A stretch of 64,000 bases of DNA from contig NEEC01000008.1 of the NCBI GenBank assembly GCA_002189035.1, forward strand, positions 2,728,001 through 2,792,000. The letters run 5' to 3'. This document shows, in pieces, positions 17,201 through 34,549 of the stretch (its first letter is position 1; each line of letters begins with the position of its first letter). The DNA comes from Utricularia gibba (lineage: Eukaryota > Plantae > Magnoliophyta). A program made the position numbers and the translations under genes. Under the pieces are notes generated by a model. The model did no database searches, was not told where the DNA came from, and was given only the letters and a program-made list of their open reading frames with translations.

Positions 17201-19604
17201 ATGACGTGCAGCAGGAGTTCTGTGTCGTGCGAATCTGGTTGCGGAGAAGAACGCGCCGCCGTCGACGGCGAGGATGAAAATCAACAGCAGGCTCCGAGTC
17301 CTGGTTGCAGCATGTCGCGCCGGGGCGGTTCCGATGGAATCTGCATCAAGTGCAAAATCAATGAAACCATCGCTGCTGCTACAAACTCTGCTTTTTCCGG
17401 AGATGCTCTCCGGTTCTGTAGTGACTGCTTCCGGTCTAACTTGTACGCGAAGTTCCGCTTCGCTGTCACTTCGAACGGCATGATTTCCCCGTCAGATAAT
17501 GTCCTCGTCGCATTCTCCGGCCATACTTCCTCTAGGTAACGCGTTTATCAACGGTTTGCTTTGTTATTTTGGGTCATAATATGGACACGATTCTGCTAAT
17601 TTTTGCGGACGGTCTTATGCGAGCGTTTCTGTTGCTGTAGTTGGGTTCCTGATTTTGGAGGGTGCTTTGAGCAGTAAAAAATTTAATCGGCTTCATTGCA
17701 TGCATTGGTGTGACATACAGAGAGCTTTGACAGGCTTATATGTGCATTTATGTTATACTCAGGGTGGCACTTCAATTTGTTCATGAGATGCAACAGAAAG
17801 CGCAACAGAACTTTGATGCCAGTAGAGATAGATCATTGACCGTGTTTGGAGTTACCGTTGCTCATATCGATGAATCTGCCATTTATCCAGTGTCCCCCCG
17901 GATGAATTTGACAAAGCAGTTGATGGGATGAAAGACATCGTGTCAAGTTTAATCCCTCCAGCAAAAAACTTCGTCGTTGTTCCTATTGAGAGCATTTATT
18001 TACTTGATTCTGCTGCTGGTAGAGAAAGACTGAGAAAGTTAGTTTCTTCTGTCAGCGATGTAACTGGAAAAGAAGATCTATTAGACCAGCTACGTCAAGC
18101 ATGCCTTCAGAAGGTATGCTTTTTTTTTTACCTCTTTATGAAAAACATGGTACGCTGAAGACAATAGAAACTGTTTAGAGCCTTCTGAATACTGTTTATA
18201 GGCAGCTGTGGACAATGGATGCACCAAAATCGTTTTGGGTAGCAGCACATCAAAAATTGCTTGCCATGTGCTTGAGGAAACAGTAAAGGTAAGCCTTGCT
18301 CTTGCTACGAGGGGTTGCGTATGTTTTCCACATTCACAATGTATAAAAAACCTGGAGCACTTTAATGAGCATTGAAATTAGTGAACTTGACGCTGGATAT
18401 CTTGCTGTTTGTTCCCGGTTTCTGTTATTGGGGTCTTTGAAATTCTTCCTTTTTATGTTTTTTTTCCCAGGGAAAGGGTTTTTCTTTGGCTGCTGATATT
18501 CAATATGTTGATGCGAGATGGGATATACCTGTTATGCTTCCCCTCCGTGACTGTCTGTTTGAGGAGTTGAAGATGTTGTGTGCTGTCGACCGGTATGTAG
18601 GATGGGATATCCGTTTGCAGTGATGTTGTTATTTTTGCTTCATCATTGGCCTTCTTGTTTTCTTGTCAGGGCAGTTTAAAGACAGTGGAAGCATTTCAAA
18701 GACCTCGATCAGGCATCAACAGCTTAGTATCTTCATTTGTAAAAGTGTTGAAGGTAGATATCTAATTTATATGTCCATAATGAGCAGTTCTTGTCAAGCA
18801 AGTAGCATCAACTGTACTGGAGCTCTTAGTAGAACAGTTGATTAAAATTTTATGGGTGCCAAGTGTTTTTGGCTCCCTGAATTTTCAGTTGTTGCGTCTA
18901 CATAAATGAGTGCACCATGATGGTATTTCTATCAAGGGATGAACATTGACATGATATGACTCGTAGTGTTCTATTTTTGACTTGTTTGAGAGAAGTGTTT
19001 TACTTTGTATATTTGTATATCCTATTTTGATGCGTTTATGGTCATATGCTTTAATGAGTTTGCGAATTTGTTTCATTTGCCTCAGGAGGAAAATCCTTCA
19101 CGAGAAAGCACAATAATGAGGACGGCAGGGAAGCTCACTCCTTTTGCGTTCAACAGTATTCCAGAAGGCAGTGCTAACGATAGCATAGCTTCTAAGCGGA
19201 GGCAAAAGAAATATAATTTGAAGTCAGATGATTCTTTGACAACAGTATCTCATTGCATCATATGTTCTAGCCCGCTGAAACTGCCTGCCAGTCCGAGTTC
19301 AAACAACTTCCACGATTCGGAAGCAACTGCTGGAATATATGCAAACACATGTTCAAGTTGCCAGTTTCAAACTCTTCCGCAGGACACTTCACTACTTGGT
19401 AACTTTGTTTCCCTGCTTCCACAGTCCATGACGAAGCATAATTCTCACATGCAGCAGGCCTTAAGGTGACACCCTAATCTCAGCTTACATGAAACCAGAC
19501 TCCGCTTCTGATCCACCAGACCTTGGTGTGTTTTCTTCCCCTTTTGCCTTTTCAGGGAACAAATCCAGGATCTTTTGCTCTCTGACAGTGATGATGGAAC
19601 ATGA
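17201..19604 (+). CDS. CTU2: Cytoplasmic tRNA 2-thiolation protein 2
   Basis: CIKCK...FCSDCF, SPSDNVLVAFSG, DASRDRSL, TGKEDLL, DIQYVDARW, EENPSRESTIMRTAGKLTPF, CIIC...CSSC; last exon EQIQDLLLSDSDDGT*. Apparent frameshift at the C6 run 17894-99. Confidence 0.93.
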
Positions 19605-20150
19605 AACCGGACTTGTTGCAAGCCTTGGGGAAACCGGCCGTGCTGTGAAATGCCAAATCTAACAAGCTCTATATCCGGAACCTCTCTTGATAGCATTGTG
19701 TTTCAGGTATCAAACCCGCGCATTCTTCTTTCTTATCCTTCCTGAGATGAGGATCCACGCCTCATCTCGACCGCCACCAACACAGACCCCGCGCATTATA
19801 TGCTGTGGCCAAAGCAATGGGAAGCTGTGGGATTCTGTTTTCAAGCGCTTAGGATCAGTTACATACAGCTCCTTCCAAAGGCTGCATTTTTCCAGACAAA
19901 CCCCAAGATTAGTGCTTGTCCGCATTTGGTATTTGACATTTTGTTGTCCGACTCTCTTCTTGATCGTGATTTTTCAAGTGCTTTGCATAGATGGAATTTT
20001 AATTTTATATTTTAGAATCATATTAAACAAATATGAAAACATCAAAAATTTATGATAATATATATATATTTATATATTAATCCTAATATATTATAATGCC
20101 TATAAAAGCTTGATGCAGTTATATTTAGGTTCTCCCTTCTTCAACCCTCT

Positions 20151-20310
20151 TCCGTCGCCGTCTGTCCGGTAGGCAAACGAGAGGAAATCTGCTGGACGCT
20201 CAAGGAAATGGAAAGGTGCAGAGAGTCCGGTTTTCTTAGTCGGAGAGTTGATTTTTTTGCTGAAACTTTGCAACGTAGTTTAAAAGGATTGAAATTGAAA
20301 AGCACTCGCA
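20151..20310 (+). repeat. Internally deleted duplicate of the 5' end of the mS23-like gene at 33084-33700
   Basis: Shared blocks ccgtcg.cgtctgtccggtaggcaaacga / gga aatctgctggac / gctcaaggaaatggaaaggtgc.gagag / ttttctt.gtcg.aga / tttaaaagga. The original ATG and about 47 bp of exon 1 are deleted in the copy. Confidence 0.9.
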
Positions 20311-20439
20311 TTCTTTCTCCTTTTGTTCGGTCGGTTTTCAGTTCTCCAAACAAACGACTTGTGTAGTGGCCTAATCTGTTTATTACTGAAATTTGGATGA
20401 AATATTCTCGAACTTTGAAGGTCATCTGTTGTTGATGAG

Positions 20440-23400
20440 ATGAAACCAAAGTTGCTGCGATTGCTTCTCAAAGAGTACATGCCCGATGAAAGGCATCCAT
20501 GTACTGACATGTCTGTTTTATCCGATGTTGTTTCAAAAGTCAAGACTCACAAATTGCTGTCCGAGCAAGCGCTTCCAGACATGAAAGAAGGTTTTTTTGA
20601 CGAATGGAAATCAGCAGTTGATTCGTGGATCAACCGTCTCCTCAGTCTTGCGTCTAGCCCTACGGTACAATTCCCAATCTTTGCTTGTATAAGCAAAAAA
20701 TTATTTGATTGCCGCTGCTGTATGTTGTTGATGCAGTATGCATTAGATGACCAGTGCCTAAGGTTCTAAAAATTTGTATAGGTAGACAATGCGTGGGTCG
20801 GAATTTGTTTTCTTGGGTTGACGTGCTATGAATGTTCTGAGGAGCGGTTTTTCGCATCATATCCTCTCTGGTTAAACCACCTTCAGTCGTGTATCCAGGT
20901 ATTTTTGTCATCGGAAGTATGATGGTTTCAAGCCCAGCCTAAGTGGGATCCATTCATTATTTTCCCCTTTCAGCCTCTTCAGTTTTTATACATGGTTTTC
21001 GGTTGTTAGGCTCCGGAGGCTTCATATATTGTGAAGGGAGCTTCATGTGCCTCAATATCAGATTTGGTTACCAGGTACTCGGACCTATTAGATCGAATGC
21101 TATGATGTATCGTTGATCATGATGCAATTGGATGTTGTAGTGCATAAGGACTATGTTTGATATTTTGTTTTTTTTTTCCAATTTGCTTTAGGTTGAGTCG
21201 TTTCTCGATTAAAAAGAAGGATGGGATATCAAAGCTCACAGGCATTATTCAGTCGCTGCTAAATTTTCTTAATGAAGATGTTCCTACTTATATTTTGGTT
21301 GGTAATTCCTGTTTATTGTATCACGAATCTTACATCAGCTAAATTTCCTATTTTGGTATTATGTTTATTGGCTTGCAGGAAAAAGCTCTATCTCTCTTGT
21401 GCAACCTGGTTATTTTGTTTCCATCATCAGTGGGCCAGCATTATAAAAGTGTATGTGATCAATCTTGAACAGTAATTAGTATGTTTTTTTGTATGCCGAA
21501 CTTGAATGCTGTGAATTAAGTGTTTTAGTGATATTAATCTAAAAAAACATGAAAGGGCATTGGATTTATGGATACAGGTTAAATCGGCAATATTGCTGAA
21601 GATAATTTCTGGAGAATGCTCTGCATTTATGATTGAGGTGTGGTTAATATCAATAATATATTGTATATTACTGCTGATATAAATCTGATGACTTCCTAAA
21701 ACGTTCTTAGAGGCTTGGTCATGCGCTAGTGGTGCTGCCTAAACCAAAGGGGGTTGAGAACACTGGTTCCCTGATATTTGAAGAAATTATGGTGTGTATA
21801 AACAGTCTACTGAACGAGGCCTTCCAAGGCCTTCAAGAAGGTATTGTTGTTGGTAGCTTTCCGTGGTAATTAGTGAGACAGATTGGGCTTTTTTTATTTA
21901 CTTGTTGTCGTCATAGAGGAAGGAGGAACAAAAACTTTGAAGGCATTGCTTCCTTTGGACAATGATCCTCTGCAGATGCTTTGTGGCTCAACAATGTCTG
22001 AACAATCAGCATTTTCAACCCGGTGGCCTGAGAGGCATCTGTTATCTAGGATTTCAAGTCTAATGCTGTGCTGCTGCAGCATGCTGAGACATGTCATGGT
22101 ATATCCCTCTGCATATGTTATTTTGAATGTTTTCAGCTTTTTTTTTTCTAATGCAACTTAATATTGACTGGCAGGTTCCTGATTTGATGTTTGTTTTTGT
22201 TGCCCTTGTTGAAAGAGTACTGATGGTTGGTGGGATGGGCGGTCTAGCCCCTTGCTCACTGATGACCGTGCTCAGACCAGAGCTTATTTTCTCAGAAATC
22301 CCACGTCTTCAGTTACACAGCTTAGAAATTCTAGAATCAGTCATTGAAGGATTGAATGCGATGTATGGTCATAACCATGTTTGTGTCATTTCCACTCCAA
22401 ACTATTTAACCCCAACTTGTTGGATGGGTATTCAAATAGCCTGTTTTATGTTTTTGCTGCAGTCAACTGCTCCAGTGTGGACCAACTATTGCCAAGCTAC
22501 TCAGTGGATACTTGTTGAGATGCAAAGTCACAGACCTGAGGATAAAAGCATACTCTGCTTTGAAACGCCTGCTGAATTCGTTGGGTGCTGGTAAGGATTT
22601 TAAGTCAGTGAATCATTCAGTGGGTGCTTGTGAGGATATGAATTCGGTGAATCTTTCATGCCAGTTGAAGTGAAAAAAATTTATATTCTCTTAATTATAA
22701 CTCTTGCAAAGCGTTTTGCCATTATTTTGTTAAAACTGAAATGATTGCCTGTCAAGTTGTTGGCGCTCATTATTTGACCACTAAACCTTTTTTCCACTCA
22801 ATGTATGTGGATACTTGTATTATTTAGCATTTTTCCCACACATATTGGGATGATTGTTTCGAGTTATGTGTGTGATTAGTTTTTTATTTTTTTTTGTGTT
22901 TTACCACTCATTATGCCGAGGACTTCTATTAACTCTTACTGCCTGATTTTTGGATAGGTGGGGTACATCATGCACTCAAGGATAAAATCAGGAATATCTT
23001 TGCAGATCTACATTTCACTCTTATGGCTGGGAAGCATTCAGATATGCAGAAAAACGCTGAGGCAGAACAGTTGCCATTCAGTCCCTTATTAAAGAAACGG
23101 AAGGTTTCTGGTGCAGCAGAACAGTTAGCACACAGCACTGTCAAAGCCAAAATGCCACATCATTCAGCTTCATTTCCCCTCAAACTAGCTGCTATAGAGG
23201 CATTGGGGCTTTTCTGATTAGGGTATCCTCTTCCTTTTCATATCCATTCTTGATATTCCGTCCATTTTTCCCCACACTTGAGTGTTTTTCAACATTTGGA
23301 TTCCTGATTTACAGGGTGGTTATATGATAAACCAAGAGTTGCGCCGAGATATTGGAAGCATGCTCATTAATGAAGCTGCGAATGCTCGTAAAGTAGGATG

Positions 23401-24286
23401 GTCAGAATTGCACCTTGGCTCCCTGCGTGCACTTGTAGCTTCCTTCATTTCTTCAGTCAGGGAACGCTCACTATATACATCCATATCCCAAGCTCTACGT
23501 GAAGGTTTGTGAGCTTATCCTATGCTTTTTTCTGTCTGTTGTGAAGGTTTTAACCGACACTTGAATCACCTGGTCGTATATGTTCATTAGTTATCCTGCT
23601 GCGCAGGCATGCACCCCCATGGCACGAAAGTTTCAGAGTTTTGCCAACACGCGTTTTACATCTTGAAGCTACCTCCATATCCGAACAAGAAACTCCATTA
23701 TGTAGGCTGGGACGAGGACCAGCAGATCCCCGCTGTAGATCCTGCTGCACAATCTGGGAACCTCAGGTTTGATGAAAGTGTATTCGACCATGACATGCTA
23801 GATGTTGATTTTTCCAGTAATGATGAAGAATCTGAAGTTCCAAGCACCCGCATTGATGAGAATGCAAATCATTCCCAACAGCCACCTGCGTTGCCAACCG
23901 TCATATTGCAGGATGAGCCCCAACATGTCAACACGCAATGTCAAACGCTCAAGACGATGAATGAGTGTGCCCCAGAGTCCACTGTTGATGGTGATGCTGC
24001 CAATCTGAAGTCCCTGGATTCAACAGATCCAAATGACCAAACAAAAGGGTTGGTAACTGCATCCGCAGAAGCGACGAGGAGCAACAGTATGTTGCAGAAT
24101 GTGACAATGCCGAGAGATGAAGCTATGCACCCTGCACCAGATCAGAATGATTCGGAGACAGGGACATCTTTTGCCTTAGCATCTATAGTGGAGAGCATCG
24201 CTGCGACGTTACCAGATTCAGATGAGGAGTCAAGTGATGATCAGCTTCCTGACATAGTAGACGCAGATCCTGATTCGGATGATTAA
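20440..24286 (+). CDS. RIX1/PELP1-like pre-rRNA processing protein (At1g30240-like)
   Basis: MKPKLLRLLLKEYMPDE, VKTHKLLSE, KSAVDSW, AWVGIC, LLSRISSLMLCC, ERVLMV, KKRK NLS, FPLKLAAIEAL, acidic C-terminus DQLPDIVDADPDSDD*. Multi-exon; a G4 run at 23205-08 needs +1. A possible upstream coding exon lies at 20208-20215. Confidence 0.88.
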
Positions 24287-24506
24287 TCCAAATTTTGTTT
24301 GGACCTCATGGGGTGCCAAGGGGTCTTCACTCTTGCCATGGTTGGTTCTTAGGTATTTATTACATGAAAATTGATTCTCTTAATTTTTGAACTTGGAAAA
24401 TCATATATGCATTATGTCGGCATCAGACACCTTATTCCCAAAGGCTGTATCAATCATGGATAAGCTTTTGGGACGACCCTGTGTGGGTATAATGGAATAG
24501 GAAACT

Positions 24507-25805
24507 TCACTGGTAGTAAGGGTGATACTGGTATACAGTTCTGCCATGCAGCTTCTGGATTGGCCTTGAATTTTTCTCGAAGCCCTGAAAATCACCAAGA
24601 CATATATATGGTAAGATTTTCTGACTGGAATCATAAAATTTCTGGAGTTACATCGTGTATGTTTTCACTTACATCATGTACTGCTTCTCTGATTGCTGTT
24701 ATTTGCTCCTTGGAGACGGTCCTGATTTTGTATTGTATGGACCACACAACTCCTTCAGCGCAAGGTGGGACTGTAAGTGATCCTGTATACCTGAAATACT
24801 TTCTGCTTCCGAATTTGATCTCCCAGGGGCTGAGTTCTCCCAATTCCAGACTTGTTCCATTCTCCTTGCACTTTTTGATGTTGCTCAGAGCCTGCATTGG
24901 GGAGTACTTAATTTTTTTCATTGGAATGCTTCTACTGATGGCAGTAGAATATGCTGCAGTAAGATTCTAGTAGTGCACTATGCCTGGGCTATGAAGGGGT
25001 CTGGTCTTCCAAGTTTGTAGAGAATCCCAATTACAGCAATTTGGCCATGGGCATTGGTGTGCACCAAGTGCACCTCCATCTCAAACCTGCTGCCAGTTAC
25101 ACCTTGAGACAAATTGGTCCAAAACCCTGCTCCTCTCGTTCCTAAGAAATCAACTGAACTATGGGAATCTCAACTGCACCTTTTGTGGTCAATTGTGTGC
25201 TCCGATGGAGTATGCCAATGGCACTGCTGCAGAGCGTAGGCCGTTCCATTTATGCAGATTCCTCCGGCATCTCCCTTCCAATGCACCTGATGACAATACA
25301 GGACACAATATGCAGCAAAGCTAAGTGAAGATTGATTCATGTCTGATTGGAGACTGTTAGCCATTACCATGATGTCATGTCCCCTGTTGAGGACAAAAGC
25401 TGGAGATGGTTTGTATCTTCTTTCTATCCCGCCAAGAGATGGAAGCACAGCAACCCTGCGCCGGTTTATGTTAATGGGAGACTGGTACCTTCCTTCCCTA
25501 CACTTTTCCCATTCTGGTTTCAATCTTCCCCAGTTCCCTGGCCCTTTCTCACCACCTTCTTGGTACGTGAATTCCTGTTCATCATCTGTTACAGCCAACA
25601 ACTCCATTCAGAAACACACCAGAGGAATGATCTCGAAAGAATCGTTCTGTGCATTGCTTGTTTCTCTGGAGAAAGAATCCATTACATGCTTTGAGAATCA
25701 GTGATGAAGAAAAAGGGGAAAGCACGCACCCGCCTCAGCATCGTGGGCTTGCGTTCGAGAACGGAGAAGAATGAGGAGGAAGAGGATTTGAAGCAGCCTG
25801 CGCAT
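24507..25805 (-). CDS. Secreted alpha carbonic anhydrase (ACA4/ACA7/nectarin-3-like)
   Basis: Signal peptide MRRLLQILFLLILL, FTY...GPGNWG, QSPINI, NRGHDIM, zinc ligands HWHTPSEH and EVHLVH, YFRYTGSLTVPPC, NSRPIQ. Six exons: 25805-25730, 25585-25369, about 25289-25176, about 25086-24984, 24891-24673, 24584-24507. Confidence 0.95.
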
Positions 25806-28071: not shown

Positions 28072-28698
28072 ATGTATCATCAGATTGTGATCATCGTGCT
28101 CCTGCTCCTTGCAGTTGACAACCATCTACATGTATCTCTATATCAGTCTGTTCACTTCATTGCTCATCTAGGAAACATGTAAAACAACTGCCCTTTTCAT
28201 GGCTTATTTGTCCAGGCAGCAGCAGCAGTGGTGAGAGTGCAGCCTCCTTCCCGTGCCCCTTCTCCAGCTCCAGCTCCAGCACCAGCTCCTTTCCCACATC
28301 CCACCCCGGAAAACTTCTTGTTCAAGGTATTTCTTCACGCTTCACCATTTTTATGATCTTTCATTACTAAATGATGCGGACTTTGTTTGTTGCTGTGTTG
28401 ATGATCAGCATGGGACGACACCTGGGAGTCTTCAGCCTCAAGGTATGAATAACATACTCAGAAAGTAGAATGCAGCAGCACCAAACATGAACGTGAGTGA
28501 GATTGTTTAAACGCAGAGTGCGGTGATCGGTGCACAATGCGGTGCTCAAAAACACAATACAGGAAGCCGTGTTTGTTCTTCTGCAACAAATGCTGCGCGA
28601 AATGCCTGTGTGTGCCGCCGGGAACTTATGGGAACAAGCAGAGTTGCCCCTGCTACAACGAGTGGAAGACCAAGAGAGGTGGTCCAAAGTGCCCTTGA
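28072..28698 (+). CDS. GASA: GASA/Snakin cysteine-rich peptide with a Pro/Ala-rich insert
   Basis: Four exons (28072-28131, 28216-28326, 28409-28442, 28517-28698) splice in frame: signal peptide, PSRAPSPAPAPAPAPF, HGTTPGSLQPQ, then the complete 12-Cys domain ECGDRCTMRCS...CLFFCNKCCAKCLCVPPGTYGNKQSCPCYNEWKTKRGGPKCP*. TATA-like ctataaaa at about 28012. Confidence 0.95.
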
Positions 28699-29018: not shown

Positions 29019-31790
29019 TTACGTCCCAGGAAATGGAATGACTGCTTCAAAGGCTTCAACAAGCATGGACACCCTTGTTTTTCTGGCGGGAGTTAGCTTT
29101 TTGACCATGTGCTGAACTGTGTAGTCAAGCATCCATTGCTCTGCCTTCTTCCTTTCATCTGTCACTAGAGACTTCAACTTCACTGTATCTGGTTCTGGAT
29201 CAGCTTCTTTCTTGTGCTTCCTTGCTTCATCCAACGCTTTGATGGATCTTTTTACTAGTAATGCATTCTTCAATTTGCTCCAGTTTCTGGGCGTTGGCAA
29301 CTCAGGTCTTGCATCCACAGCTGCTTTTGTTTCTGCTTTCAGTGGAGATCTCTGATCACTTGAAATCGGTTCTTCTGAAACGAAACCATCTCTCAAGGAT
29401 TGAGCTCTGAAAGTCTCCTCTCGTGCAAGAAGAATTTCATTGACTGTCTCTTTTATGAGTTTCACCACTTCTTCTTTGGTAAGCACAATCCTCACATTGT
29501 TTGACTCCAAATCCTTTTCATGAACCTTATCTGATGAATCATCATTTGTTACTGGAATATTCTCATTTTCAACTTCCTCAGCTTCTGATCCATCAAAAAG
29601 ATTATTTCCTACTCTCTCAGCTAGAGTTGGCACCACATGCTGATAAATCATATGCCACATTTTAATATGGTTGGTTCTCCCCGTTTGTGAAGAGCTTCCA
29701 CCATTTTCCATCTTTGATTCCATACATTTTGAAGCAAAGCCAGCATCTTCTATCACTGAAAGTTCAGCGGCATTTCTATTGTTTCTTGAGGAGTCAGATT
29801 CAAACTCCATGGATTTCACAACATGATTGGCACCTTCCGCAGCTTCTTTTATACTCCCTTGTTTGAATTCACCAGATAAGCTTCGTATCCTAACTGATGG
29901 TTCGAGGAATTCATTGTTTGAAACAGAGATGTCTGCAGCCTCCTTGGTAGACTTATTTCCACTTGCATGCTTTTCCAAGTTTAAAGAAACTTCGTCACCA
30001 CTATTAAGTCTAGCCTTCTGATCACCAGGCGCAGAAGCTTCTAGCCTTCCTTGTTGTAGCTCAGATGTAGAATCTTTATCTAGCCCATTTTCATTGATTC
30101 CTGTCAAGATTTGAATACGAGTATGAGTGTCTTCATGTGGAGGAACTACTGATTCAAATGCTTTTACTAGCAATGCCACTTTTTTCTTTTGGGATGGAGC
30201 AAGCTGACCTACTACTCGGGAAAGAGCATAATCCAGCATCCATTCTTCTGCACTTTTTCTCCCACCAAGTACCGGCGACCTCAGGGTACGCTTTTCAGCT
30301 CCAGGCTCAAAATTCAAAGGTTTTATCTTTGGGCTCCTGGCATCAAAGGGTCTTACTTTCTCTAACTCCTCGATGAATTTTTGAAGAAGAACCCACTTCT
30401 TCAAACCACTCCAATGATTCAATGCTGCCTTATTTTTTCTACTTATACCTTTCAATACTTCACTTCCAGAGTCGCCAGACAAGGGAACTTGCTCCGGTTG
30501 ATCAGATGCTGCCATAACCTCACATTTATCAGCATCAGGTTCTTTTTCTGGCAGAAAATCTACATGAAAAAGAAAAGTAGTGGTGATACAGTCAGCTGAA
30601 GCAAGGTCAGGATTTATATCTGTAGATACATATAAAGATCACCGCTTACTCTCTTTTTCATGTTGTTCGATGCACTCACTTCCATTTGAGTAGTGGCCAG
30701 TCATGGAGTGATTCAAGTCCTGAACTTCAGGCAGAAGAATCTTGTCTATTGCGTCCCTGACATGCTGGACAACCATTTGTTTCCTGTCTTCAACATCTTG
30801 AGCTTCGTATTCACTGTTGATCACAGTATCTAAGTCAGATAATTCCTTGGAGAAAACTGAAACTTCCTCCACAGCAAGAGTAGTGGCTTGTGTACTGGAA
30901 CTTTCAGCATCAGATTCTGCAACTGGCTTGTGTGAAGATTCAGCAACAGAATTTGAAAAATTCTGATGTATCAGTTTCCAAAGGCTGGCATGCCCTGGTT
31001 TGCTGAATTGAAGCTTAACATTATCATAAGTAAAACAATCAGTTTTGGAATCCTCAACATTATAAACTTTTTTATCTCCACAATCTGCAGAATCAACTTC
31101 ACTAGAACCACCAGAATCTGTCGTTAGGCCATCTTTTGTGGGATATTGATCAATGGACTTAACTTGTTCTTCTGAATGATCATTCAAGAGACAGTAGCAG
31201 CTCAAACAATATCCCTTCATGCCAAATGCCTTTCCAGTACGTTGCTCGTACTTGGCCATGATTCTGAGACTGTCCTGGTGAGCTCTTTCAGGGAATGAAG
31301 TTTCACCAAATACAGTTTCAATAAGACTCAAATCATGCATCTGAGTAGAATCAACGGCAGCTTCATCATGCTCCCCATACAAAGGAACAGTAACAGATTC
31401 AGCCTCTACTCTGCACCTCTTTTTAGGTGAACCACCCTTCCACCTCCGGTTATATTGTCCTCGTTTGACTAAGAAATAGTTGGATTGGTAAGTTGAATCG
31501 TGATGACGATGTCCATGTAGAGAGCAGTGATTGTATCTACAAAATTTGATGGCTGAAGCATTTTCAACTTGTGCCCCTCCATCATCAGCAAAATTGGAGT
31601 TCTTTAAAGCAGAAGAATGTGTTGCCTTACTAAAAGCAACACCCTCTGAAATGGTGCAGCATTCCAATGAAGCTTCTTTGTTAGGCTTGAAACTTGCCTT
31701 CCTTATAAGAACCCCAACATTTCTGGAACTCCTTGAGACAGATTTTCGCCTTATCAGCCATGAAACACCAGAACAGCTCTTGTTCTCCAT
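29019..31790 (-). CDS. PICBP: Plant calmodulin-binding protein (PICBP-like)
   Basis: Two large exons (31790-30650, 30547-29019) join in frame. N-terminal YNHCSLHGHRHH; two CaM_binding repeats ending AEEWMLDYAL...KVALLVKAFESV and AEQWMLDYTV...RVSMLVEAFEAV. Confidence 0.88.
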
Positions 31791-33112
31791 TTTTTTGCTC
31801 TCTGAGCTGTTTGTTGCCTTGAGATAATGAGGATGCTGCTCAGATGAAAAGAAAACAGAATGTGTGTCATGATGAGATTCATCCCCTGTCTCCAGATCAA
31901 CAAAAAGGTGATCACAAACACATCAAAGTTTTCATCTTTTCTCAACGCCAACGAAAACCCAAATAGAAACGTGACAAAAACCAAGAAAAAGAACCGAATT
32001 CATATATTTCAATAAGTGGGGAACCGAAACACCAATTACCAACCATGGTGCTTCCAATTATCGGCCCAAAATGTGCACAATCCCCAGATTCAGATGTAAG
32101 ACGACGCTTTAAGCGTTGCGTAAAGACAAGAACAACAGCGATTCTAATTTTGTGCCCACTGCAAATCAGACTGTACTGGTCAACAAGAAAAATGGTCAAG
32201 TACGCCATTCTTTGGCTTCAGCATCAGTTCACATCAAACCGCATTAATTACCTGTCAGCCATCAACGTCTCTGTGTTACACCGATCCAAATGAGGCTGCG
32301 TTACTGGCAACTGCAAATCAGATAGAACTCAAAACCCCTGACTTCGTCAGCTTACATGGATGCCCGTGACTCTCCCCATTCTGCACAGATGAGTGCTTTA
32401 CTGGGTCACCGCCATTATCACAACAAAGTTTATTCCAATGAAAGCGATCAAAATGTACGTATAATGCAACATTTGATGTCAAATTCACATGAAACTCATT
32501 TATTCTTATGAATCTGTAGTTACAATCCCATACTAATAGCACATTTTTTACGAAAATGTGACTACACTGAATAATGCATTTGATGATCAAGTTATGTTGA
32601 GATGAGACAAAGGGTGCAAACACATGAAACTTGATTTCACAGTATTAGAACAAATAATATTCCAACAAGAAATTAAAATGAAATAATTAAATATATAATA
32701 GATTAAATATTAAAATTAATTGATTTGCAAATTTTTTATTTTTTTAATATAATCTATATTTATTGTATACTTAAATTTTATAAATGATCATCTAATCTAT
32801 CAAATATTTAATTTTAATATAAATAAGATTCTATTAAAAATAAGATTAAGATTAATATATCTATTAAAATTTAAATTCATTTTGAATGATTGACTTTTTC
32901 CTCTCTGTAGTAATCTTCAAGATTATAAATTAATAATAGAAATTAATTTTACATTTATTATACTATTGGGCTTTTTAAGAGGATTGGGCTGATGCTGGTA
33001 TACGGTTGATCTTGGACTGAGCCTGAGAACGATAAAAGCCCGATCCATATATAATTTGGTTCCCCCTCGCCTTTTAATTCTCCTCCGTCGGCGTCTGTCC
33101 GGTAGGCAAACG

Positions 33113-34549
33113 ATGTCGTTTATGAGGGGAAATCTGCTGGACAAGAGCCGGAAGCTTGTGAAAGGGTTGGCCATGGCAGAACCCATATGGCTCAAGGAAA
33201 TGGAAAGGTGCGGAGAGGTTATTTTTCTTCGTCGTAGAATCGATTTTATTCTGACGTTTTACCGTCCTGCAGGGAGCCTCCGGTGACCTTTCCCCGATCG
33301 GAGAATAAGCTCAAGCCCATTATACTTCCGGAGGATGATTATGTAAATAAGTTCATCAAGAAGCATACGGATTCCAAGCTCGTGGATTCTATCAAGTAAT
33401 TGGCTCTTTTTTTTTTGATATCTCTCCTGTGGTAACGTTTAATATTATGGTGACATTTGTGTCGTATTGGATGAGAATGTGTGAGCGCTCAGTTTGCTTG
33501 TAGCATAATTGCGATCTGAAGGTGTTTTTTTTCTGAATTTAATACGGGGATTCGATGAAATTTTATAACTATGTATGAACTTGGTAGGGGGTGTAGCTTT
33601 TCAGAAAGCGTGGACTTTTTGATGCAGTTATTTGGAATTTATTCGTTGCAGCTGCCTAGCTTTGTGTTTAAAAGGAATAAAAATGAAAACTCGTGATTTT
33701 GAGGCTGTTTGCACATGTTAAGAGTGTAGCAAATGACAATCAGACTTCGATGTGTGTACTACTTGCGAGTGAGAGCTTGCAATGAAGTATAAAATGTTCT
33801 GCACCCAAAGCCATATTCACACCAGAACCTTCTTCTCATGTCGACCCTGCTTTTCGTTTGTGTTTCAGATGGATTTTAGGTAGCTTTGTAGCAAGAGTTC
33901 TTTCTTCTCCTTTTGTTGTTTGCACCATATTCAGTTTTCAGTTCTCCAAACACACTATTTGTGTTGTGACCTAATCTGTTTGTTATTGAACTATATGAGC
34001 ATCCCAAATTAGCAGAAGGGGATGAAGCTTCAAGTTGTTCACTTGACTTTAGGCTTATGATAGTTATGTGCATTCCTCCAAGTTAATACCTTGTGACAGT
34101 ATTTTCCATTTGCTTAGGAGTAATGATTTGTCCCTTTTTCTAGTATTTCTGGTTTCGATCCTCCCCCAGCCCGTGTATTTGCTTGGAGAGTCCTTGAGTT
34201 GAAGGAACAGGGGCTAACGGAAGAGGATGCCATGTCTATTGCAGATGTAAGTATAGTTTGTTTTCGTCTTGTGTTTTTGTCGTTCCTCATATGCTTTGAT
34301 TGTGTCCAGATGGAGTATCGAGCCGACAAAAAAGCCAAAAGGAAAGCATATCGTAGATTGAAAGAAATTGCAAAACCCCAAGGAAAGCAGCGCCCTCCAA
34401 ATCCATATCCAAGTGCTGTAAAGGAGATACAGGCTGAAGAAAAGAAGTATGTTCATGACAGGTTTTTTGATCCTCAAACACTTCGAGTCCTTAATAAACT
34501 GAAACAAGATCGATTACAAGGGATGGCAGATAGAAGAGGATTCATATAG
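33113..34549 (+). CDS. Plant mitochondrial ribosomal protein mS23-like (At1g26750-like)
   Basis: Four exons (33113-33207, 33273-33395, 34144-34246, 34310-34549): MSFMRGNLLDKSRKLVKGL..EPIWLKEMER|EPPVTFPR..LPEDDYV..GFDPPPARVFAWRVLELKEQG..MEYRADKKAKRKAYRRLKEIA..PPNPYPSAVKEIQAEEKKYVHDRFF. The mS23 identity is from recall. Confidence 0.85.

What the first reader, a model, noticed from the sequence alone, without database searches (positions are those of the whole stretch)
20151..20445. A deleted copy of the mS23 gene's 5' end appears recruited as promoter or first exon of RIX1/PELP1
Seen directly: 20151-20310 matches the 5'UTR, exon 1, intron 1 and a piece of intron 2 of the gene 13 kb away (33084-33700). 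Intron sequence is retained, so this was a DNA-level copy. The copy lost the parental ATG and about 47 bp but kept the internal ATG GAA AG and the GT donor (20208-20217). Splicing that donor to gaag| at 20420 gives M-E-R-S-S-V-V-D-E-M-K-P-K, in frame with RIX1. RIX1 homologs extend upstream of the KPK motif, yet here that frame has stops at 20398 and 20416 and no native upstream ATG. Inference: an essential 60S/rixosome gene swapped its N-terminus or promoter for a fragment of a mitoribosomal gene, making a young chimeric gene. The alternative acceptor at 20341 would instead make the copy a uORF-bearing 5'UTR.
Basis: partly seen in the sequence, partly recalled or inferred. Interest (0 to 1): 0.8.

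Follow-up and report, generated by a model that had tools for sequence, protein, structure and literature searches.

The report
Ribosome-assembly gene runs on borrowed first exon

Summary
Window 20100-20390 is a collinear, four-times-deleted copy of 33030-33990. That region holds the core promoter, 5'UTR, exon 1, intron 1 and two pieces of intron 2 of an intact mS23 gene. The alignment scores 150 against 25±3 for shuffles.

RNA contigs from three samples of one study carry the joint 20215|20421, with 59-64 nt of copy-specific sequence upstream of it. So the copy supplies the transcription start (about 20149), the leader and the splice donor of the RIX1/PELP1-like mRNA. The intron between them is almost entirely mS23 intron debris.

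The only AUG left in the leader (20208, mS23 codon 29) has a strong context and is in frame. It would give M-E-R-S-S-V-V-D-E-MKPK. Its use in translation was not tested.

Two deletions removed exactly the other four parental ATGs. The exon part is 95.5% identical to the parent, against 79% for the flanks, which suggests constraint.

The copy is not young: non-exonic divergence is about 0.25 substitutions per site. It is absent upstream of the Genlisea aurea and Sesamum orthologues, which keep a telo-box promoter and an ATG in one exon.

This is a new member of a known kind, 5' exon and promoter capture by partial duplication. This scan found another such case elsewhere in this genome.

The parts
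20100..20148 (+). Copied mS23 core promoter (matches 33030-33081, 71% identity), with TATAAAA at 20101-20107
   Evidence: It lies directly upstream of the 5' ends of the RNA contigs.
20149..20215 (+). Exon 1 of the RIX1/PELP1-like mRNA. It is a copy of the mS23 5'UTR plus a truncated exon 1, 64/67 identical to the parent, with no ATG except 20208-20210.
   Evidence: contigs start at 20149-20154 and the joint is at 20215|20421. Also.
20208..20210 (+). First AUG of the mRNA. It corresponds to mS23 codon Met29, has A at -3 and G at +4, and is in frame with RIX1 through the splice.
   Evidence: Its use in translation is inferred, not shown.
20216..20420 (+). Intron 1 (205 nt, GT..AG, 62% A+T). It is built from remnants of mS23 intron 1 (20216-20263) and intron 2 (20278-20301, 20305-20390), plus about 30 nt of non-copy sequence.
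20421..20664 (+). Exon 2, holding the N-terminal RIX1 domain. A second in-frame ATG lies at 20440 (MKPKLL...).
20421..24286 (+). Remainder of the RIX1/PELP1-like coding region: 13 more exons, 811 aa from ATG 20208 when read from the RNA contigs.
33030..33990 (+). Parental segment of the mS23 gene that was copied: core promoter, 5'UTR, exon 1 (33113-33207), intron 1, exon 2 (33273-33396) and part of intron 2.
33082..34549 (+). Intact mS23 gene, a protein of the mitochondrial ribosome small subunit, with four coding exons.
   Evidence: matches to PDB 9evt_U, 9evs_U and 6xyw_Bu.
23205..23208 (+). G4 run in the assembly where the RNA contigs of both studies have G5. As assembled, the RIX1 frame breaks here.
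   Evidence: (tables 4 and 5c)

Best explanation
A DNA-level partial duplicate of the 5' end of the neighbouring mS23 gene lies directly in front of the coding region of a RIX1/PELP1-like gene. The duplicate was about 1 kb when copied and is now whittled to about 290 bp by four deletions. It serves as that gene's transcription start, leader and first exon.

Shown:
- Transcripts begin at or just upstream of 20149, inside the copy.
- They use the splice donor inherited from the mS23 exon 1/intron 1 boundary (20215|GT).
- They splice over 205 nt, mostly mS23 intron remnants, to an acceptor (AG|20421) 19 nt before the conserved MKPK.

Inferred:
- The copy's TATA-containing core promoter sets the start site.
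- The old telo-box promoter and start codon seen in relatives have been displaced or lost.
- Translation starts mostly at the single remaining, mS23-derived AUG (20208). It is the first AUG, has a good context and is in frame, so the protein begins M-E-R followed by S-S-V-V-D-E-M-K-P-K. Leaky scanning to 20440 could give a form nine residues shorter.
- The leader was shaped by selection. Two deletions removed exactly the four other parental ATGs, and the exon part stayed far more similar to the parent than its flanks.
For: Copy and its extent.

Splice 20215|20421: three RNA samples show it, with 59-64 nt of copy-specific sequence upstream of the joint. That stretch spans both copy-specific deletions. 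Only 18-19 nt in a row are shared with mS23 mRNA there, too few for a 31-mer assembly chimera.

Direction of copying: exon 1 of the parent aligns to residues 1-31 of the solved plant mS23 and exon 4 to residues 114-184.

Recipient family: PF08167, plant PELP1-like, collinear over about 800 aa.

Reading frame and ATG content. About 1% of random placements of the two deletions leave only the last ATG.

Constraint: exon part 64/67 identical against 164/208 in promoter plus intron parts, Fisher p = 0.0012.

Relatives: Genlisea aurea (EPS62365.1, locus L003) and Sesamum indicum (L002) have a telo-box, a short leader and the ATG in one exon, with no trace of the copy. No telo-box or site II motif lies upstream of RIX1 here, and a TATAAAA sits at 20101.

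Transcript separation: upstream-gene contigs end by 19989, so the transcripts are separate.
Against: - All three RNA samples showing exon 1 come from one study. The only other study with coverage (X5, a variant about 2-3% different) has fragmentary contigs that start at 20507, so it says nothing either way.
- Contigs drop rare isoforms, so a minor downstream start site or use of the 20341 acceptor is not excluded.
- Promoter activity of the copied 50 bp is inferred only from position. The parent's site II motifs (32967, 32985) were not copied.
- Start-codon use is untested. Genlisea and Olea orthologues have short N-termini, so a start at 20440 would probably also work.
- Whether the acceptor arose from the old start codon cannot be resolved. 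Alternative nucleotide alignments are about equally good.
- A second RIX1 paralogue elsewhere in the genome was not excluded.
Confidence: 0.8

Rival explanations
1. The copy is a non-coding leader only. The captured exon gives the transcription start, 5'UTR and a promoter-proximal intron, but the protein starts at the second AUG (20440, MKPK...). On this reading the in-frame upstream AUG is incidental or contributes a minor isoform.
For: - N-termini upstream of KPK vary widely and are short in Genlisea (MSDPAK...) and Olea (MDDILKPK...).
- Being in frame has a 1-in-3 prior, and only six codons need to be stop-free.
- The ATG at 20440 sits where some Lamiaceae orthologues have Met.
Against: - The AUG at 20208 is the first in the mRNA and has A at -3 and G at +4. 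Under the scanning model it should capture most ribosomes.
- All other ATGs of the parental exon were removed, but this one was kept.
Confidence: 0.3
2. The copy was passively inserted into an existing 5'UTR or promoter. The native RIX1 promoter upstream of 20100 still drives transcription, and the copy merely happens to lie where transcription starts and to contain a usable donor. It would then be tolerated rather than recruited.
For: - Only about 50 bp of parental promoter was copied, without the parent's site II motifs.
- An A+T-rich 110-bp stretch with TATA-like runs lies between the upstream gene's 3' end and the copy.
Against: - The telo-box elements seen just upstream of the ATG in Genlisea and Sesamum are absent here.
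- The contig 5' ends lie 41-53 nt downstream of the copy's own TATAAAA.
- The exon part is unusually conserved, and its upstream ATGs were purged.
Confidence: 0.2
3. Artefact: the copy or the junction results from mis-assembly of the genome or of the RNA contigs.
For: The assembly does carry at least two 1-bp indel discrepancies against RNA, at 19714 and 23205-23208.
Against: - Independent RNA contigs from three samples reproduce 59-64 nt of the copy without mismatch, across both copy-specific deletions.
- The exact sequence shared with the mS23 mRNA at the junction is under 31 nt, so a k-mer chimera is not possible.
Confidence: 0.02
4. Reverse direction: the RIX1 leader is the original, and mS23 acquired its 5' end from it.
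For: None beyond the symmetry of any pairwise similarity.
Against: - mS23 exon 1 encodes residues 1-31, conserved in the solved plant mitoribosome proteins.
- The RIX1-side version lacks exon 2 and most of the intron sequence.
- Genlisea and Sesamum RIX1 loci lack the segment.
Confidence: 0.01

Closest known systems
Chimeric genes, or partial duplicates with recruitment, formed by DNA-level partial gene duplication (exon shuffling at the 5' end). Reviewed in PMC3449122; fusion genes in Oryza in PMC9199173.
   Same: A fragment holding the promoter, first exon and intron of one gene is duplicated next to another gene's coding exons. The donor's splice donor is joined to a recipient acceptor, the parent stays intact, and intron and promoter sequence in the copy shows a DNA-mediated origin.
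   Different: The recipient is not a new duplicate. It is the resident copy of an ancient housekeeping gene, whose own promoter and start codon were displaced. At most 8 nt of donor coding sequence (Met-Glu plus two bases) reaches the protein, so the change is mainly regulatory and structural rather than a new protein.
Another captured-first-exon gene in the same genome: scan finding s1-186719, an epimerase promoter and exon 1 on a membrane-anchored ubiquitin-like gene.
   Same: According to that note (not re-tested here): same genome, a nearby donor, a copy of promoter plus first exon, transcribed and spliced as predicted.
   Different: The donor and recipient are different. There the copy is 480 bp and reportedly intact. 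Here the copy is heavily deleted, and its upstream ATGs are gone.
Filler-DNA or templated patch repair of double-strand breaks in plants.
   Same: A short stretch from a locus on the same chromosome, 13 kb away and in the same orientation, is copied into a new site as a patchwork of collinear blocks.
   Different: The mechanism is not demonstrable here. The four gaps could equally be later deletions, and no diagnostic microhomology or target-site feature was found.
Yeast Rix1 and human PELP1, scaffold of the Rix1-Ipi1-Ipi3 / PELP1-TEX10-WDR18 complex in 60S maturation. The function is established knowledge; it was not tested here.
   Same: PF08167 N-terminal domain, a length of about 800 aa, an acidic C-terminal tail, and collinearity with plant proteins named PELP1 or RIX1 N-terminal domain.
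   Different: The sequence is very divergent: 44% identity or less to any plant orthologue, with a very long branch. The first exon is foreign.

Membership tests
Chimeric gene by DNA-level partial duplication (5' exon/promoter capture) | An intact parental gene exists, and the fragment is clearly derived from it | tested here: met
   The mS23 gene at 33082-34549 is intact, and its exon 1 matches residues 1-31 of the solved mS23. The fragment lacks the ATG, 47 nt of exon 1 and all of exon 2.
Chimeric gene by DNA-level partial duplication (5' exon/promoter capture) | The copy contains promoter and intron sequence, so it is not a retrocopy | tested here: met
   Blocks match 50 bp upstream of the leader, intron 1 and two parts of intron 2.
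Chimeric gene by DNA-level partial duplication (5' exon/promoter capture) | A mature transcript joins the donor-derived exon to the recipient's exons | tested here: met
   The joint 20215|20421 appears in contigs of X9, X1 and X10, with 59-64 nt of the copy upstream.
Chimeric gene by DNA-level partial duplication (5' exon/promoter capture) | Donor-derived sequence contributes to the protein | tested here: inconclusive
   The first AUG (20208) is in frame with a good context, but no translation data exist. At most Met-Glu plus two bases of an Arg codon come from the donor.
Chimeric gene by DNA-level partial duplication (5' exon/promoter capture) | The arrangement is derived, that is, absent in outgroups | tested here: met
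   There is no similarity to the copy or the parent upstream of the Genlisea aurea (L003) and Sesamum indicum (L002) orthologues, both of which have a telo-box and the ATG in one exon. Closer relatives were not available.
RIX1/PELP1 family (PF08167) | RIX1 N-terminal domain | tested here: met
   Exons 2 and 3 hit PF08167 collinearly at profile positions 12-57 and 61-96. Each is below the cut-off alone because they are pieces. All full-length homologues carry PF08167.
RIX1/PELP1 family (PF08167) | Full-length collinearity with named plant PELP1/RIX1 proteins | tested here: met
   Residues 10-810 align to residues 12-889 of Lamiales orthologues at about 39% identity.
RIX1/PELP1 family (PF08167) | Role in 60S maturation; essentiality | not testable with these tools
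   Inferred from yeast and human knowledge only. In the 25 listed differences from a divergent accession, 11 are synonymous and 14 non-synonymous, which suggests moderate constraint.
mS23 (mitochondrial small-subunit ribosomal protein) | Sequence match to mS23 chains of solved plant mitoribosomes | tested here: met
   Exon 1 matches 9evt_U/9evs_U at E 1.2e-7 and 6xyw_Bu at 1.9e-7. Exon 4 matches 6xyw_Bu at 4.3e-12.
   No contig shows that joint; only 20215|20421 is seen. Rare isoforms cannot be excluded from contigs.

The most novel reading that the evidence does not exclude
In this compact, fast-evolving plant genome, replacement of promoters and first exons by short local partial duplications may be a recurrent route of promoter turnover. 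It may reach even ancient housekeeping genes. Selection would then sculpt the captured leader afterwards, purging upstream ATGs and keeping the donor and one in-frame AUG. At least one other transcribed case is noted elsewhere in the same genome.
Probability: 0.25. Interest if true: 0.6.

Novelty: new member of a known kind. Interest (0 to 1): 0.45.

Why it matters
This case documents how an old, conserved gene can change its promoter, leader, first intron and probably its start codon in one step, by borrowing a fragment of a neighbour.

The intermediate traces are still readable: remnants of the donor's introns, four deletions and purged upstream ATGs. That makes it a good teaching and test case for promoter turnover and for how captured leaders are cleaned up.

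It also matters for annotation. An ab initio model would start this gene at 20440 and miss exon 1, and the assembly's 1-bp error at 23205-23208 would break the frame.

It does not reveal a new kind of mechanism.

Tried and rejected
1. Finding the window's own protein or close relatives. The search for homologous proteins with the 109-aa unspliced ORF found nothing. A profile search returned only distant plant orthologues. The exhaustive representative search gave nothing above 68% identity to exon 2. The event could therefore not be dated with congeners.

2. Showing that the acceptor AG|G derives from the ancestral start codon (ATG to AGG). I rejected this as a firm claim. In the DNA alignment with Sesamum, Genlisea and a Logan contig, the window's GAAGG aligns equally well with the Sesamum GAA-GGA codons or with the Genlisea GGAAGG just before its ATG.

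3. Synteny. mS23 is not within 10 kb of the Sesamum orthologue, and the flanking genes differ in Genlisea and Sesamum.

4. The run from a second study (X5) gave no information on exon 1.

5. No other copy of the segment exists in the window.

6. A larger segmental or tandem duplication as the origin. No similarity was found between the regions upstream of the copy and upstream of the parent, beyond weak A+T-rich matches.

Searches by exact protein identity were therefore not run.

Full report
**1. The observation**

Reading both places and aligning them shows real similarity. The local alignment scores 150.5, against 25.2 ± 3.2 (maximum 36.9) for 200 shuffles.

The core blocks are:
- 20102-20197 ~ 33032-33142
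- 20198-20263 ~ 33190-33254

Two exact 22-mers are shared and occur nowhere else in the 64-kb window.

A search of the remaining 157 nt before the RIX1 coding region against the rest of the parental gene found a further strong block. This is 20331-20390 ~ 33931-33990, 87% identical, E 2e-16. None of 300 shuffles and none of 259 other window slices reached its score. The block extends leftwards to about 20305 with a 10-nt gap.

The copy is therefore about 290 bp (20100-20390). It corresponds to about 960 bp of the parent (33030-33990), minus four deletions:
- 12 nt, containing the start codon
- 47 nt of exon 1
- about 411 nt: the rest of intron 1, all of exon 2 and the start of intron 2
- about 210 nt of intron 2

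It ends about 30 nt before the acceptor.

**2. The two genes**

The parent's exon 1 aligns with residues 1-31 of the mS23 chains of solved plant mitoribosomes (9evt_U and 9evs_U at E 1.2e-7; 6xyw_Bu at 1.9e-7). Its last exon aligns with residues 114-184 (E 4.3e-12). The four-exon gene reads through intact. That fixes the direction of copying: mS23 is the source.

The downstream gene's exons hit PF08167 (RIX1) collinearly. A profile search returns several hundred plant proteins with PF08167, named 'Pre-rRNA-processing protein RIX1 N-terminal', 'proline-, glutamic acid- and leucine-rich protein 1' or 'like AT1G30240'.

The protein assembled from the RNA-supported exons is 811 aa. It aligns end to end with Lamiales orthologues at about 39% identity. 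In a maximum-likelihood tree it sits on a very long branch next to Genlisea aurea, inside Lamiales. The usual long-branch caveat applies.

**3. RNA evidence**

Two index searches found RNA runs of the same species. The single read-laying run placed Logan contigs of four runs on 19001-24900.

Runs X9, X1 and X10 come from three samples of one study. Each has one contig of 2.5-2.6 kb that covers all RIX1 exons with GT..AG joints. Each also carries the joint reported as 20212>20418 'cut +3', which is donor 20215|GT and acceptor AG|20421.

The contigs extend 64, 59 and 62 nt upstream of the joint, so they begin at 20149-20154. That stretch crosses both copy-specific deletions. It shares at most 18-19 consecutive nucleotides with mS23 mRNA at the junction, so it cannot be a k-mer assembly chimera or mis-laid mS23 RNA.

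Contigs of the upstream gene (CTU2-like) end at 19920-19989, so the two transcripts are separate and the intergenic gap is only about 160 bp.

The alternative acceptor at 20341 is not seen. The fourth run (X5, another study, about 2-3% different in sequence) has only fragmentary contigs starting at 20507, so it is uninformative for exon 1.

**4. Anatomy of the new 5' end**

- A TATAAAA at 20101 lies 41-53 nt upstream of the contig ends, and it is inside the copy.
- The leader (20149-20207) has no ATG.
- The first ATG (20208) corresponds to mS23 Met29. It has A at -3 and G at +4.
- Through the splice it reads M-E-R-S-S-V-V-D-E-M-K-P-K, in frame with RIX1.
- The intron is 205 nt and 62% A+T.

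**5. Signs that the captured leader is under constraint**

The parental leader plus exon 1 has five ATGs, at 33113, 33122, 33173, 33187 and 33200. The 12-nt and 47-nt deletions remove exactly the first four, leaving the last. Only about 1% of random placements of two deletions of those lengths do that. This test is post hoc.

The transcribed part of the copy is 64/67 identical to the parent (95.5%). The promoter and intron parts are 164/208 identical (78.8%), a Jukes-Cantor distance of about 0.25. Fisher p = 0.0012.

If only the parent were constrained, about half the neutral divergence would be expected in the exon part. The observed three differences are fewer than that. The same numbers show that the duplication is old, not recent.

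**6. Relatives**

Lamiales orthologues begin MSASEGMYDVALKPKLL.

In Sesamum indicum (L002), telo-boxes (AAACCCTAA) lie directly upstream of an ATG in the same exon as KPK. In Genlisea aurea (EPS62365.1, L003), a telo-box lies about 70 nt upstream of ATG TCG GAC CCT GCG AAG, again in one exon and with a short N-terminus. Neither locus, nor a Logan contig (L001), has any similarity to the copy or to the mS23 5' region.

The window has no telo-box or site II motif upstream of RIX1. The parent's site II motifs (32967, 32985) lie outside the copied segment. So the ancestral architecture was replaced in the window's lineage after it separated from Genlisea.

A nucleotide alignment cannot decide whether the acceptor AG|G is the mutated old start codon or an older GAAGG. 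I leave that open.

**7. Interpretation**

Shown:
- a DNA-level partial copy of the mS23 5' end
- its use as the first exon and splice donor of RIX1 mRNA
- its absence in two outgroups

Inferred:
- The copied core promoter sets the start site.
- Translation starts at the captured AUG. I give this about 0.6-0.65.
- Selection cleaned the leader.

The origin is unknown. It could be templated break repair from a site 13 kb away, or a larger duplication followed by deletions.

The phenomenon belongs to a well-described class: partial or chimeric duplicates with recruitment and 5' exon shuffling (PMC3449122; PMC9199173). Earlier notes of this scan describe another transcribed captured-first-exon gene in this genome (s1-186719), and one case that did not hold up (s1-216408). 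I did not re-test them.

**8. Verdict**

This is a new member of a known kind and of moderate interest. What is unusual is that the recipient is a resident ancient housekeeping gene rather than a new duplicate, and that the traces of later tidying are so legible.

Noticed in passing
window 23205-23208: The assembly has GGGG where the RNA contigs of both studies have GGGGG. As assembled, the RIX1 reading frame breaks after 'AAIEALG'. With the extra G it runs to 811 aa. This is probably a homopolymer error in the assembly.
   Followed up: partly
window 19714: RNA contigs of X9, X1 and X10 have an extra C after a CCC run, in the 3' part of the upstream CTU2-like gene. This is a second 1-bp discrepancy between assembly and RNA.
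   Followed up: no
window 19084-24465 (run X5): Contigs of run X5 carry the same species label but differ from the window at about 2-3% of exon positions. In RIX1, 11 of the 25 listed differences are synonymous and 14 non-synonymous. X5 is a divergent accession or a closely related taxon.
   Followed up: partly
window 20421-24286: The RIX1/PELP1-like protein is extremely divergent: 44% identity or less to any plant orthologue, with a terminal branch of about 1.8 substitutions per site. The Genlisea aurea orthologue is also on a long branch.
   Followed up: partly
window 21450-21581: Run X5 shows a second joint, 21452>21581 (AT..TT with one extra G), beside the GT..AG joint 21450>21578. It may be a contig variant or an alignment artefact.
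   Followed up: no
window 24631-25607 (-), 28537-28698 (+), 29019-30515 (-): The neighbouring genes are an alpha-type carbonic anhydrase (PF00194), a cysteine-rich ORF that looks like a GASA/Snakin peptide (judged by eye only) and a plant calmodulin-binding-domain protein (PF07839). Gene spacing is very tight throughout.
   Followed up: no
I did not examine it.
   Followed up: no
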